Below, one piece after another: positions 18,788-28,084 of a DNA stretch of 64,000 bases. The position numbers were made by a program, and so were the translations under genes. Every line of letters starts with the position of its first letter. Within the stretch, counting starts at the first letter, position 1. Location of the stretch: positions 124,001 through 188,000 of the IMG/VR virus record IMGVR_UViG_3300047548_001122. One strand, given 5' to 3'. The notes beneath the pieces are model-generated. The model was not told the DNA's origin, searched no databases, and worked only from the letters and a program-made list of their open reading frames with translations.

Positions 18788-18816
18788 TTGACAATTGAAG
18801 AAAGTTCCTATATAAT
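18788..18816 (+). promoter_or_regulatory. Sigma70-type promoter for the tRNA-like RNA
   Basis: TTGACA (18788)-17 bp-TATAAT (18811); no ORF between it and the next promoter. Confidence 0.88.
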
Positions 18817-18828
18817 TGTATCTGAAAT

Positions 18829-18891
18829 GCGGAGAGTCCGAGACAACCTGCCCCCGCAGGTAGAGAGGTTTAACTCCTCTTATCCGCTCCA
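18829..18891 (+). ncRNA. 63-nt mini tRNA-Gly-like RNA with encoded CCA
   Basis: Acceptor GCGGAGA/TATCCGC + T73 + CCA; T-arm AGAGG-TTTAACT-CCTCT; anticodon-like arm ACCTG-CCCCCG-CAGGT; D-arm reduced to GTC-CGA-GAC. Confidence 0.75.
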
Positions 18892-18896
18892 CCCAC

Positions 18897-18963
18897 GTTA
18901 TCAAATTAGCAACAGTTGTTAAAAAGACAACGGCTTGACTTTTCCTTTTTCCTGTGTTATAAT
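18897..18963 (+). promoter_or_regulatory. Extended -10 sigma70 promoter with upstream tandem palindromes (vWA gene)
   Basis: TTGACT (18935)-17 bp-TGnTATAAT (18958); GTTRT-N7-RCAAC at 18897 and 18915. Confidence 0.8.
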
Positions 18964-18991: not shown

Positions 18992-21256
18992 ATGACAACT
19001 TTTACCGCAGAGACTAAATCGCAATTGGCAAAACTCCTTGCCACCGAAAACTTGCGAATTGAACACCAAAAGATTCGTACAGCCCGATTCGATCCAAAGA
19101 ATCGGGTTTTATATTGTCCTATTTGGAAAAATATGTCAGGAGCTCTTTATGATCTTTTGATGGGTCATGAAGTAGGTCACGCTTTGTACACTCCTGCTCA
19201 AGGTTGGCATGATGCGGTTTGCGAAAAGGGTAAAAACTATAAAGCATTTTTGAATGTTATTGAAGATGCTCGAATCGAAAAGAAAATCAAACGGAAATAT
19301 CCTGGTATTCGCAGGTCTTTTGTTACTGCCTATAATGAATTGATGGAAAGAAATTTCTTTGAGATTAAAGGTAAAGACATCAATAAAATGTCCTTCATTA
19401 ATCGATTGAACCTTTTCACAAAATCTTCTGGAACTATTGATATTTCTTTTACTGGTTTTGAAGAAAAACTTGTAGAAGAAGTTATGCGTTGTGAAACTTG
19501 GGATGATGTAATTCGTGTCACTGGTCTTGTTTGGGATTATTCCAAAGATGAACAGTTCGAAATGATGCAAGATTTTGATTTCGATAATTTGGAATTCGAT
19601 GAGGATGGTGAATACGAATTCGAATATGAATTGGAAGAATCTGAAGAAGGTTTCGATTCTGATGATTCGAAGAAAAATGGAAAATCATCTACTCAATCTG
19701 AAGAAAATGGTGAAGAAGGTGAGGGTTCGGGAAATTCTAATAAATTCGACACCGAATCAAATGAAGAGAGTGAAGGAGAAAGTGAATCTTTTTCGATAGT
19801 TCGTAATAAAGAATCTGCTTTAACTAACAAAGATATGTTTCAACCATTCTGTGAAACTGATGATGCGTTTCGTATGAATGAAAATACTCTGCTTGATGAA
19901 AAATGTAAAGAGTATATCTATCTTACTTTGCCTACTCCTGTTTTGAAAAATATTATTACGCCAGCTTCTCGCGTACAAAAACTTTTGGCCGATCATTACT
20001 CTAATCATTTTAACAGAAATGAATTGTTCAATAATTTCAAACGAAAAAATGAACGATACATTTCTTTGCTTGCCAAAGAATTCGAAATGAAGAAGGCGGC
20101 TTCTTGTTACGCAAAAGCTAAAACTTCAAATACAGGAGATATTGACGTATCGAAATTGTACAAATACAAAATTGATGATTCTATTTTCAAAAAGATGATG
20201 AGAATACCAAAAGGTAAATCTCACGGTTTGATTTTGCTTTTGGATAAATCAGGTTCAATGTCAAACAATATGAAAGGTTCTATTGAACAAATTCTAGTTT
20301 TGGCTATGTTCTGTAGAAAAGTAAATATTCCTTTTTCAGTTTACGGATTTGGGAATAATTCTACCGGTTATTGTATCGATAAGGAAGTTGATAACCTCGG
20401 TCGTGATGAAGAGTTTTTCAAACACAAAATTGGTGATGTTTATATGAATGCTGTATTCCTTAGAGAGTACATTAATTCTAGAATGAGTAATGTTGAATTC
20501 AACAATGCTTTGAAAAATATGGTTTGTTTGATGAATGGATTCTCACATAGGTATGGTAGAGATTATCCTCCTGTCGAATGTTTGTCGAATACACCTTTGA
20601 CTGAAGCTATTGTTGCTACCGAAGCAATCACTCAAGAATTTAGAAAAGTAAATAATCTTGATATTGTAAATCTGGTGATTGTACACGATGGTGATGCAGA
20701 TAGCATTTCTCATTATAATACTGGTCGAGATGAAGAAGGATATTCTTTGACTGGAAGATTTTCAACAAGTTATTTTAATGTTCTACTTCGTGACAATAAG
20801 ATTCATTTTGAAGATAAGTTGGAACACGATAGTTTAAATTCTGCTGTTTTGAAATGGTATAAACAAAAAACTGGTGCAAATGTTTTTGGTTTTTTTGTAA
20901 CCGATGATAATGCCAGTAGCATGAACGGTGCTATTTGTAAAAATTTCTACACTGAAAATGAAACTAAAAACTTCTATGATAGAATTGAAAATTATCATGA
21001 AAGAAAAGAAGCTGCAACAGTTCTAGTCAAAAAACTTAAAAAAGAAAAGTTTCTATTGTCGAAAAAACCAGGGTTTAAAAGCTTTTTCATTGTACCTGGG
21101 GGTAGCAATTTGCAGATTGATGATGGCGAACTTGAAATTGATGATACCAAAAAAATTACGGCAACAAAATTGACTAATGCCTTTTTGAAGTATAATAAAA
21201 AACGGCAAGTTAACCGTATTTTGGTTTCCAAATTTATTGACGGTATTGCAGTTTGA
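18992..21256 (+). CDS. CobT-like protein: HEXXH metallopeptidase-like N-domain + vWA domain
   Basis: HEVGHALYT, NVIEDARIE, acidic linker, MIDAS LLDKSGSM, NTPL, HDGD. Confidence 0.8.
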   Translation: MTTFTAETKSQLAKLLATENLRIEHQKIRTARFDPKNRVLYCPIWKNMSGALYDLLMGHEVGHALYTPAQGWHDAVCEKGKNYKAFLNVIEDARIEKKIKRKYPGIRRSFVTAYNELMERNFFEIKGKDINKMSFINRLNLFTKSSGTIDISFTGFEEKLVEEVMRCETWDDVIRVTGLVWDYSKDEQFEMMQDFDFDNLEFDEDGEYEFEYELEESEEGFDSDDSKKNGKSSTQSEENGEEGEGSGNSNKFDTESNEESEGESESFSIVRNKESALTNKDMFQPFCETDDAFRMNENTLLDEKCKEYIYLTLPTPVLKNIITPASRVQKLLADHYSNHFNRNELFNNFKRKNERYISLLAKEFEMKKAASCYAKAKTSNTGDIDVSKLYKYKIDDSIFKKMMRIPKGKSHGLILLLDKSGSMSNNMKGSIEQILVLAMFCRKVNIPFSVYGFGNNSTGYCIDKEVDNLGRDEEFFKHKIGDVYMNAVFLREYINSRMSNVEFNNALKNMVCLMNGFSHRYGRDYPPVECLSNTPLTEAIVATEAITQEFRKVNNLDIVNLVIVHDGDADSISHYNTGRDEEGYSLTGRFSTSYFNVLLRDNKIHFEDKLEHDSLNSAVLKWYKQKTGANVFGFFVTDDNASSMNGAICKNFYTENETKNFYDRIENYHERKEAATVLVKKLKKEKFLLSKKPGFKSFFIVPGGSNLQIDDGELEIDDTKKITATKLTNAFLKYNKKRQVNRILVSKFIDGIAV

Positions 21257-21257
21257 T

Positions 21258-21308
21258 GTTGTGCCGAAACAACACTGGGCTTGACTTTTTAGTTCAGTGT
21301 GTTATAAT
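21258..21308 (+). promoter_or_regulatory. Sigma70-type promoter for AAA gene with upstream palindrome
   Basis: GTTGT-N6-ACAAC then TTGACT (21281)-16 bp-TATAAT (21303); shares GGCTTGACTTTT...TGTGTTATAAT with the 18935 promoter. Confidence 0.7.
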
Positions 21309-22537: not shown

Positions 22538-22553
22538 TTTGCCTGTAAAACAC

Positions 22554-22582
22554 TTGACACTACACACAGAGTATAGTATAAT
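22554..22582 (+). promoter_or_regulatory. Sigma70-type promoter
   Basis: TTGACA (22554)-17 bp-TATAAT (22577). Confidence 0.88.
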
Positions 22583-22591
22583 ATCAACATA

Positions 22592-22636
22592 ATTTGAGAG
22601 AACGGTTGCCTCTCAAATGATTTTTTAAAAGCAACC
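22592..22636 (+). promoter_or_regulatory. Pseudoknot-capable 5' leader
   Basis: 9-bp stem ATTTGAGAG/CTCTCAAAT; loop GGTTGC (22604-09) complementary to GCAACC (22631-36). Confidence 0.6.
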
Positions 22637-22662
22637 TGTATTAAAATATGGAGTATTTTGTT

Positions 22663-22935
22663 ATGTCAGTTAAATCTAAAATCCTTGCTTACCTTTCTAA
22701 AGAAGATGGTTACAACACTTTGACGCCTGCTAAGATGCAGTCAATGTTTGGTGTTTCCAATCCTTCCGCAACAATCAATGATCTCCGCAATGAAGGTCAT
22801 GCTATTTACTTGAATAGCCGTTACAACAGCAACGGAGAAAAAGTTTTCTTCTACCGTCTTGGTACTCCTACCAAGCGTATGGTCGCTGAAGGTATTGCAG
22901 CAATTCGTGCTCAAGGAGAGCGCGCATTTGCCTGA
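22663..22935 (+). CDS. Small winged helix-turn-helix protein
   Basis: KILAYLS..LTPAKMQSMFGVSNPSATINDLRNEGHAI..FYRLG; GGAG RBS at 22650. Confidence 0.65.
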   Translation: MSVKSKILAYLSKEDGYNTLTPAKMQSMFGVSNPSATINDLRNEGHAIYLNSRYNSNGEKVFFYRLGTPTKRMVAEGIAAIRAQGERAFA

Positions 22936-22966: not shown

Positions 22967-22999
22967 AGAGAGGATATATATTTGTATCCTCTCTTTTTT
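22967..22999 (+). terminator. Rho-independent terminator
   Basis: AGAGAGGATA-N8-TATCCTCTCT followed by T run. Confidence 0.75.
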
Positions 23000-27682: not shown

Positions 27683-28084
27683 ATGGTAGATATTAATAAA
27701 TTCGTAGAAGTTCAATTGGTAGAACAAGATGATTTTCTAAAGGTCAGAGAAACCTTAACCAGAATTGGTGTATCGTCAAGAAAAGAGAGAATTCTTTATC
27801 AGTCATGTCATATCTTGCACAAGCAAGGTAAATATTATATTGTACATTTTAAAGAATTGTTTGCTCTTGATGGTAAACCTTCAAATATTACAGAGAATGA
27901 TATACAAAGACGTAATGCTATCGCCAACCTTTTAGAAGAATGGGGATTAGTAAAAATCATGAACAAGAAAGTTATGGAAGATAACTTAGCACCAATACAT
28001 CAAATTAAAATTATTTCCTTCAAGGAAAAAGATGATTGGGAATTAATACCAAAATACAATATAGGTAAAAAAGAAAAGATTTAA
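27683..28084 (+). CDS. regA: Translational repressor RegA
   Basis: DDFLKVRETLTRIG, LYQSCHILHKQGKYYIVHFKELFALDG. Confidence 0.97.
   Translation: MVDINKFVEVQLVEQDDFLKVRETLTRIGVSSRKERILYQSCHILHKQGKYYIVHFKELFALDGKPSNITENDIQRRNAIANLLEEWGLVKIMNKKVMEDNLAPIHQIKIISFKEKDDWELIPKYNIGKKEKI

What the first reader, a model, noticed from the sequence alone, without database searches (positions are those of the whole stretch)
22554..22935. H-type pseudoknot in the leader of a small wHTH gene
Seen: between a perfect promoter and the GGAG RBS lies a 9-bp hairpin whose loop (GGTTGC) is exactly complementary to GCAACC 12 nt downstream, followed by an AU-rich tract to the RBS. Established: T4 gene 32 uses a leader pseudoknot plus an AU-rich tract for translational autoregulation. 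The unit is closed by its own terminator (22967). Inference: an autoregulated module or a new cis-regulatory RNA.
Basis: partly seen in the sequence, partly recalled or inferred. Interest (0 to 1): 0.6.

Follow-up and report, generated by a model that had tools for sequence, protein, structure and literature searches.

The report
Conserved leader pseudoknot before phage wHTH gene
The short leader of a small, highly conserved DNA-binding-type gene in an uncultured T4-like phage folds into an RNA pseudoknot that evolution has kept in many related phages, so it is a real new regulatory RNA candidate whose job (probably control of that one gene) is still untested.

Summary
Window 22554-22582 is a 12/12 sigma-70 promoter. 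A 9-bp hairpin follows at 22592-22618. The 3' six bases of its loop (22604-22609) are complementary to 22631-22636. A 13-nt AU-rich linker leads to GGAG (22650-22653) and ATG 22663. The gene encodes 90 aa and ends in a strong terminator (22967-22999).

In one sequence this pattern is no better than chance. About 30 such pseudoknot patterns occur per shuffled genome. Comparison is what proves it. Across 52 distinct leaders from related viral contigs, 91% of pair cells are paired, against 35-42% when the partners are slid. 13 of 16 pairs show compensatory double changes, in both stems. About 19 different stem-2 sequences occur. The G-U pairs fit only the + strand RNA.

The same architecture recurs before homologues down to about 39% protein identity, with unrelated sequences and in other gene neighbourhoods. 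It is single-copy in this genome and matches no Rfam family.

The protein is a generic winged helix (PF14090-like) of unknown function.

Most likely the element is a gene-specific post-transcriptional operator, with autogenous translational repression as my leading reading (about 0.4). A protein-independent 5' stabiliser is the main rival. Riboswitch, attenuator and DNA-operator readings fit poorly.

The parts
22554..22582 (+). sigma-70 consensus promoter, TTGACA-17 nt-TATAAT; inferred transcript start near 22589
   Evidence: a promoter is kept at this place in relatives
22592..22600 (+). pseudoknot stem 1, 5' strand (ATTTGAGAG)
   Evidence: 8 of 9 pairs show double changes
22601..22603 (+). 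loop 1 (AAC), crosses the deep groove of stem 2
   Evidence: 1-5 nt in relatives, mostly starting with A
22604..22609 (+). stem 2, 5' strand (GGTTGC), abuts stem 1 with no spacer (loop 2 = 0)
22610..22618 (+). stem 1, 3' strand (CTCTCAAAT)
22619..22630 (+). loop 3 (12 nt; sequence not conserved; the T run is not conserved either)
22631..22636 (+). stem 2, 3' strand (GCAACC)
   Evidence: 5 of 7 pairs show double changes
22637..22649 (+). single-stranded AU/U-rich linker between pseudoknot and ribosome binding site
   Evidence: no conserved pairing
22650..22653 (+). Shine-Dalgarno GGAG, within the conserved (A/T)TGGAGT
22663..22935 (+). 90-aa winged-helix protein gene (PF14090/HTH_39-like, phrog_4973), stop codon included
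22967..22999 (+). intrinsic terminator closing the one-gene unit

Best explanation
SHOWN: the leader folds as RNA on the + strand into a classical H-type pseudoknot. Stem 1 has 9 bp, loop 1 has 3 nt, stem 2 has 6 bp stacked directly on stem 1, and loop 3 has 12 nt. The element is conserved and attached specifically to this winged-helix gene family in many uncultured T4-like phages. It belongs to a monocistronic unit: consensus promoter, pseudoknot, 6-16 nt AU-rich linker, GGAG, 90-aa gene, strong terminator. INFERRED from promoter spacing: the pseudoknot starts within about 0-4 nt of the mRNA 5' end. INFERRED (mechanism, my commitment): it is a gene-specific translational operator. When the winged-helix protein accumulates, it binds the folded pseudoknot, recognising its shape plus the conserved GAGAG/CUCUC top of stem 1. 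Because the pseudoknot ends only 20-30 nt before the AUG, the bound protein keeps the 30S subunit and S1 off the short linker and Shine-Dalgarno sequence, capping its own synthesis. The same structure probably also shields the 5' end from RNase E-type decay.
For: Covariation in both stems: 91.2% of cells paired against 35-42% for slid partners, 13/16 pairs with double changes, covariation score 0.494 against 0.203 with 0/500 shuffles reaching it. G-U wobbles fit only the + strand. About 19 distinct stem-2 sequences occur, while only 8.5% of shuffled tails offer a partner. The geometry is constant: loop 2 = 0, loop 1 about 3 nt, stem 2 of 6-8 bp, loop 3 of 10-16 nt. Gene specificity: the genome holds one copy. 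In IMG/VR, 7 of 7 look-alike hairpins followed by this gene have the pseudoknot; the other look-alikes that show a partner (10) are not followed by it, and the one inspected lay inside a coding region on the opposite strand. The architecture recurs with unrelated sequences before homologues of 62%, 48%, 41% and 39% identity, including one behind a tRNA gene without a visible promoter. No conserved alternative fold hides the SD, so a trans factor is the simplest way to make the structure regulatory. The top of stem 1 is far more conserved than stem 2, which suggests recognition. The product is a nucleic-acid-binding fold. Precedent: the T4 gene 32 pseudoknot operator, whose mRNA is also unusually stable (PMC3014915).
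Against: No binding or expression data exist; no RNA run could be listed. The fold resembles DNA-binding regulators (NiaR/BirA N-domains, ArsR, MarR; Z about 8, a common level), not known RNA binders. Some homologues have only a simple 5' hairpin or none: clade L120-125, Stenotrophomonas phage DLP6, L307, L308, L311, L312, and Pelagibacter phage HTVC008M. So the protein does not strictly need a pseudoknot. In the most distant pseudoknot-bearing leaders the stem sequences are unrelated, so any recognition would have to be mainly by shape. A 5'-terminal structure plus a 3' terminator also fits a pure stability role.
Confidence: 0.4

Rival explanations
1. Protein-independent 5' end element. The pseudoknot at the very 5' end, together with the 3' terminator hairpin, protects this heavily transcribed early mRNA from 5'-end-dependent RNase E/RppH or RNase J attack, and/or presents the U-rich linker as a ribosome standby site. 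No feedback is involved.
For: The -10 to stem 1 distance is 5-11 nt, median 7, so few or no unpaired 5' nucleotides remain. The terminator is universally kept. More distant homologues carry some other stable 5' hairpin at the same place, such as a GNRA tetraloop or a GC hairpin, as expected if any stable structure will do. T4 gene 32 mRNA, which starts with a pseudoknot, is the most stable T4 mRNA.
Against: Stem 1 alone is about -9.7 kcal/mol and would suffice, yet stem 2 is maintained by many compensatory changes. Other early promoters of this genome do not share the device. In L309 the pseudoknot follows a tRNA gene with no promoter in between, so a 5'-triphosphate terminal position is not always kept.
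Confidence: 0.3
2. An operator for a different trans factor: another phage protein (RegA, gp32) or a host protein binds the pseudoknot or the start region.
For: The phage encodes RegA (window 27704-28066) and gp32. The start region contains UUGUUAUGU, 9 contiguous nt of the T4 RegA SELEX consensus quoted in PMC3014915. In L308 the gene sits next to regA.
Against: RegA sites are unstructured and lie at the AUG, so RegA does not explain the pseudoknot. The UUGUUAUGU match is confined to the window's own lineage. The pseudoknot occurs only before this one gene.
Confidence: 0.1
3. A small-molecule riboswitch of the H-type pseudoknot kind (like preQ1-I/II, SAM-II/V, fluoride, guanidine-III).
For: Its size and topology resemble the minimal pseudoknot riboswitches.
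Against: No Rfam hit even at E up to 10. Loops 1 and 3 vary in length and sequence. The SD lies outside the pseudoknot and no conserved alternative pairing exists. The downstream gene is not metabolic.
Confidence: 0.05
4. A DNA-level palindromic operator (TTGAGAG...CTCTCAA at about +4 to +28) bound by the wHTH dimer, with the RNA hairpin as a by-product.
For: The arms are better conserved than the spacer, and the product looks like a DNA-binding regulator.
Against: Arm spacing varies from 8 to 13 bp. G-T 'pairs' are tolerated on one strand only. This reading cannot explain the covarying second helix, which interleaves with the first. No second copy of the arms or of the stacked-helix sequence sits at other promoters.
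Confidence: 0.04
5. A transcription attenuator or terminator: hairpin plus T run.
For: In the window, stem 1 is followed by GATTTTTT.
Against: The T run is absent in most relatives, and the scan does not call it a terminator.
Confidence: 0.02

Closest known systems
Bacteriophage T4/T2 gene 32 translational operator (5' pseudoknot plus A+U-rich tract; PMC3014915, PMC535899)
   Same: A T4-type phage. An H-type pseudoknot with coaxially stacked stems lies at the 5' end of the leader, followed by an unstructured AU-rich stretch to the RBS. The gene product binds nucleic acid. A stability role is likely as well.
   Different: The gene encodes a 90-aa winged-helix protein, not the SSB. The linker is 6-16 nt rather than about 40 nt, and no UUAA(A) repeats are kept, so cooperative coating is unlikely and direct steric block is more plausible. 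There is no sequence similarity. Binding is untested.
Ribosomal-protein leader pseudoknots (E. coli rpsO/S15, alpha operon/S4)
   Same: A pseudoknot in the leader serves as a protein-binding site for autogenous translational control.
   Different: In those leaders the pseudoknot includes the SD or start codon, with entrapment or displacement. Here the SD lies outside the structure.
Minimal pseudoknot riboswitches (preQ1-I, SAM-II/V, guanidine-III)
   Same: An H-type fold of about 45 nt in a 5' UTR.
   Different: No model match, no conserved loop nucleotides, the SD is not part of stem 2, and the gene is non-metabolic.
5'-terminal stabiliser stem-loops (ompA-type). This comparison rests on my own knowledge, not on a paper read here.
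   Same: A stable structure lies within a few nt of the 5' end of a highly expressed mRNA.
   Different: It is a pseudoknot rather than a hairpin, and it is specific to one gene family.
Automated catalogue of about 8,500 candidate structured RNAs from IMG/VR (PMC10690425)
   Same: The same data source. That work found 12 motifs upstream of gp32 genes and 879 within 25 bp upstream of genes with known domains.
   Different: I could not check whether this motif is among them, because the supplements are not held. Nothing in the main text mentions a winged-helix or HTH gene.

Membership tests
T4 gene 32-type autoregulatory leader | H-type pseudoknot with stacked stems at the 5' end of the leader | tested here: met
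T4 gene 32-type autoregulatory leader | Long unstructured A+U-rich tract with UUAA(A) repeats from the pseudoknot over the RBS, allowing cooperative binding | tested here: not met
   The linker is only 6-16 nt (27 in one clade), AU-rich, with no conserved repeat
T4 gene 32-type autoregulatory leader | The regulated gene encodes the gp32 single-strand-binding protein | tested here: not met
   The product is a winged helix; gp32 is at genome 40488-41087
T4 gene 32-type autoregulatory leader | The product binds the leader and represses its own translation | not testable with these tools
   Needs binding, toeprint or reporter assays
Known pseudoknot riboswitches / any Rfam family | Match to the family covariance model | tested here: not met
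   No relevant hit at E up to 10 in the region, and none at gathering score in the window or in 18 related loci
Known pseudoknot riboswitches / any Rfam family | Conserved unpaired nucleotides forming a ligand pocket, and an expression platform that hides the SD or forms a terminator | tested here: not met
   Loops are variable; no conserved alternative pairing
Intrinsic terminator / attenuator | GC-rich hairpin followed by a conserved U run | tested here: not met
   The T run is present in the window only
Palindromic DNA operator of a dimeric HTH protein | Fixed half-site spacing; symmetry needed on DNA only | tested here: not met
   Spacing is 8-13 bp; there are strand-specific G-U pairs; an interleaved second helix covaries
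5'-terminal mRNA stabiliser | A stable structure with no more than about 4 unpaired nt at the true 5' end | tested here: inconclusive
   Promoter spacing implies it, but the start site is not mapped, no RNA run was listed, and L309 has no promoter before the pseudoknot
Pfam PF14090 (HTH_39) winged helix (the protein) | Profile match and a winged-helix fold | tested here: met
   The window protein scores 17.4 bits, below the 21.3 cut-off, but relatives carry PF14090. The AF2 model (pLDDT 86) has three helices, a beta-hairpin wing and a C-terminal helix. VIA Z is about 8 to wHTH regulators.

The most novel reading that the evidence does not exclude
A transcription-factor-like winged-helix protein of T4-like phages moonlights as an RNA-binding translational autorepressor, with a 5' pseudoknot as its operator. 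After gene 32, this would be the second viral case of a pseudoknot used for translational autoregulation; the 2010 T4 review (PMC3014915) called gene 32 possibly the only one. It would be the first involving a wHTH. The same protein may also act on the conserved CTGTTGT...ACAACAG palindromes that sit before several early promoters of the same genomes.
Probability: 0.3. Interest if true: 0.7.

Novelty: new member of a known kind. Interest (0 to 1): 0.55.

Why it matters
This is a well-supported, compact RNA motif of about 45 nt, absent from Rfam and widespread in uncultured T4-like phage genomes. There are 192 close relatives in IMG/VR, and the protein family has 221 clusters at 50% identity. 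The motif marks a small, very conserved early protein of unknown function as tightly controlled. The system is easy to test: a 75-nt leader, a 90-aa protein and E. coli-type signals. If autoregulation holds, it widens the very short list of viral pseudoknot operators and shows a winged helix reading an RNA shape. If the pseudoknot only stabilises the mRNA, it is a natural minimal 5' protection module that could be useful in expression design.

Tried and rejected
- Rfam at permissive and gathering thresholds, on the region, the whole window and 18 related loci: nothing relevant.
- A search for RNA sequencing runs: none was listed. Read laying was therefore not used and the transcript start is not mapped.
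- The MFE fold of the single sequence pairs part of the stem 2 3' strand with the SD. This is not conserved, so I rejected it as a switch.
- The generic hairpin pattern scanned in IMG/VR gave mostly chance palindromes. One apparent second family (L149/L190): the instance inspected (L149) lies inside a coding region on the other strand.
- The stacked-helix or arm sequences do not recur at other promoters as a DNA operator.
- The search for related loci with the deep protein alignment failed for lack of a conserved stretch. I used single distant proteins and identity look-ups instead.
- The MAFFT alignment of the second clade (A3) put stem 2 out of register, so I did not count pairs on it. Per-sequence detection was used for that clade. 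Its automatic picks for L093, L094 and L120-125 are spurious and were discounted.
- PDB sequence search, Foldseek PDB, VIA wide and BFVD give only a generic winged helix and no functional lead.
- Literature search on HTH_39 gave no functional study.
- Supplements of PMC10690425 are not held.
- No covariance model was built, because the descriptor scan and the MAFFT-based count already answered the questions.

Full report
**Context.** The window is bases 124001-188000 of a complete 214-kb IMG/VR virus record with terminal repeats and 34% G+C. It is a T4-like phage. A CobS-type AAA ATPase lies just upstream. The sliding clamp and clamp loader lie downstream. RegA is at window 27704-28066, and gp32 lies outside the window. 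By cobS DNA, the nearest cultured relatives are Pelagibacter phage HTVC008M and cyanomyoviruses.

**Observation.**
- The promoter at 22554-22582 matches the consensus 12/12. It is one of six perfect promoters in the window, against 0.1 expected.
- Stem 1 is 22592-22600 paired with 22610-22618 (9 bp).
- The loop is AAC plus GGTTGC. GCAACC follows 12 nt after stem 1 (22631-22636).
- A 13-nt AU-rich linker leads to GGAG at 22650-22653.
- The terminator is at 22967-22999.
- The true start is ATG 22663 (90 aa). The in-frame ATG 22648 used by gene callers is missing or out of frame in relatives.

**Is it more than chance?** Not from one sequence. A generic descriptor gives 52 sites in this genome against 19-43 in shuffled genomes, and the MFE z-score of the leader is only -1.1. 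Comparison decides the question.

The protein has 192 close relatives in IMG/VR. Fifty-two distinct leaders were aligned by MAFFT without any structural guidance, and pairs were then counted:
- 91.2% of cells form standard pairs, against 35-42% when the 3' partners are slid by 1-3 columns.
- 13 of 16 pairs carry compensatory double changes (8 of 9 in stem 1, 5 of 7 in stem 2).
- The covariation score is 0.494 against 0.203 for shuffles (0 of 500 reach it).

Stem 2 occurs as GGTTGC/GCAACC, GGTCGC/GCGACC, GGTCTC/GAGACC, GACTGC/GCAGTC, GATCAC/GTGATC, GAATCGC/GCGATTC, AGTCGC/GCGACT and others, about 19 real types in all. Only 8.5% of shuffled downstream tails offer a partner. G-U pairs such as GAGTCGC/GCGATTC and TTGCGGAG/CTCTGTAA work only on the + strand, so the constraint acts on RNA, not DNA.

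The geometry is constant and textbook for an H-type pseudoknot:
- loop 2 = 0
- loop 1 about 3 nt, over a stem 2 of 6-8 bp
- loop 3 of 10-16 nt, over a stem 1 of about 9 bp

RNAalifold finds only stem 1 among nested pairs and no conserved structure around the SD.

**How far does it reach?**
- The architecture persists with other sequences in a second clade (L083, L086-L108; protein about 48-67% identical).
- It is also present in L082 (62% identity).
- It is present in L309 (41%), where it sits behind a tRNA gene with no visible promoter.
- It is present in L313 (39%) on a 156-kb contig.
- It is probably present in L310 (43%, read by eye).
- It is absent in clade L120-125, where a 4-bp GNRA-tetraloop hairpin takes its place.
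- It is absent in Stenotrophomonas phage DLP6, which has a GC hairpin, and in L307, L308, L311 and L312.
- It is absent in HTVC008M, where the gene directly follows a phage S21 gene.
- In this genome it is single-copy.
- Among look-alike hairpins in IMG/VR, all seven followed by this gene have the pseudoknot. The other look-alikes that show a partner (10) are not followed by it, and the one inspected lay inside a coding region on the opposite strand.
- The downstream terminator is kept in 78 of 78 distinct sequences.

**The protein.** Pfam gives a sub-threshold HTH_39 hit and PHROGs gives an unknown-function family.
- The word search finds 477 clusters, and the best 120 listed are at least 80% identical and unnamed or 'hypothetical' apart from a few automatic labels.
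- The exhaustive search finds 221 clusters at 50% identity, nearly all small (~90 aa) proteins.
- The AlphaFold model (pLDDT 86) has three helices, a wing and a C-terminal helix.
- Structure searches return only generic winged-helix regulators at common Z values and uncharacterised phage HTH proteins.

The protein is therefore a nucleic-acid-binding fold with no assigned function.

**Mechanism.**
- A riboswitch is unlikely. Rfam has no match, the loops vary, the SD lies outside the fold and there is no alternative pairing.
- An attenuator is unlikely because the T run is not conserved.
- A DNA operator is unlikely. The arm spacing varies from 8 to 13 bp, the wobble pairs are strand-specific, and that reading cannot explain the interleaved second helix. 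No other copies exist.

Two readings remain.

(a) A gene-specific operator bound by the gene's own product. In favour:
- The element is strictly linked to one protein family across different sequences and neighbourhoods.
- Stem 2 is maintained although stem 1 alone is already stable (about -9.7 kcal/mol).
- The GAGAG/CUCUC top of stem 1 is conserved beyond what pairing needs.
- The SD is left free, so regulation needs a trans factor.
- The pseudoknot ends only 20-30 nt before the AUG, inside the 30S/S1 footprint.
- T4 gene 32 is a precedent (PMC3014915).

(b) A protein-independent 5' stabiliser or standby element. In favour:
- The pseudoknot begins 5-11 nt after the -10 box.
- The unit is capped by a strong terminator.
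- More distant homologues carry other 5' hairpins.

The two are not exclusive; gene 32 mRNA combines both roles. I commit to (a) at about 0.4 and give (b) about 0.3. RegA may add a separate layer: the start region holds UUGUUAUGU, nine contiguous nt of the T4 RegA SELEX consensus, and the phage has regA. This match is limited to the window's lineage.

**Novelty.** The RNA matches no curated family. The kind, a leader pseudoknot as a cis-regulatory element in a T4-type phage, is known. It may already sit unnamed in an automated IMG/VR catalogue (PMC10690425), which I could not check. I file it as a new member of a known kind, with moderate interest.

**Limits.** There are no expression or binding data. 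The transcript start is inferred from the promoter. The pair count covers the first clade (protein at least 80% identical to the window's), and the more distant cases rest on per-sequence detection and reading by eye.

Noticed in passing
window 18788-18893 (+): A perfect promoter (18788-18816) drives a tRNA-like RNA of about 65 nt (about 18829-18893). It has an acceptor-like stem followed by an encoded U+CCA, a 3-bp mini D arm, a 6-bp stem with only a CCCC tetraloop where the anticodon arm should be, and a T-like arm with loop UUUAACU. MFE is -26.1 with z -2.96. ARAGORN and Rfam find nothing. It is conserved upstream of the cobT-like gene in relatives L247-L260, with compensatory changes in all three helices and invariant loops. 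Marine relatives have ordinary tRNA genes at that place. It is a candidate anticodon-less tRNA mimic.
   Followed up: partly
window 18915-18939 and 21258-21285 (+); also genome 9419, 13248, 13338, 27826: Six + strand promoters carry a palindrome, (C)TGTTG(T)-N5-8-(A)CAACA(G), a few bases upstream of the -35 box; none occurs on the other strand. In relatives the arms are conserved in sequence rather than covarying, which looks like a protein operator. It could be the DNA target of the winged-helix protein; this is untested.
   Followed up: partly
window 22539-22553 (+), 12219 (-), 35485 (+): A second upstream motif, TTGCCT(G/T)(T/A)A(A/G)AAC.., ends just before TTGACA at three promoters, including the one studied. 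TT(G/A)CC is also kept at that place in the related loci.
   Followed up: no
related loci, e.g. L050, L087, L089, L091, L094 (upstream of the wHTH gene): In many relatives an inverted repeat whose arms covary flanks the -35 hexamer of the wHTH promoter, so that TTGACT sits in the loop. It is probably the cobS terminator overlapping the next promoter. In the window only CTGT...ACAG remains.
   Followed up: no
window 22648-22665: Gene callers start the gene at ATG 22648 (95 aa, P0001). Comparison shows that the conserved start is ATG 22663. Some database entries of 121-129 aa extend even further upstream at the N-terminus, apparently into the leader.
   Followed up: yes
window 22654-22668 and 27704-28066: The start region UAUUUUGUUAUGUCA shares UUGUUAUGU with the T4 RegA SELEX consensus (PMC3014915), and the phage encodes RegA. 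The gene may therefore also be a RegA target.
   Followed up: partly
L244 (HTVC008M 91228-91768); L308: In Pelagibacter phage HTVC008M the homologue lies 1 nt after a phage-encoded ribosomal protein S21 gene, downstream of cobS. In L308 the homologue follows regA. Synteny near cobS and the clamp genes is kept widely.
   Followed up: no
window 18992-21256 (+): The 754-aa gene before cobS has no Pfam hit at E up to 0.1. It has an acidic, Ser/Glu-rich low-complexity middle. Its counterpart in HTVC008M is annotated as a peptidase.
   Followed up: no
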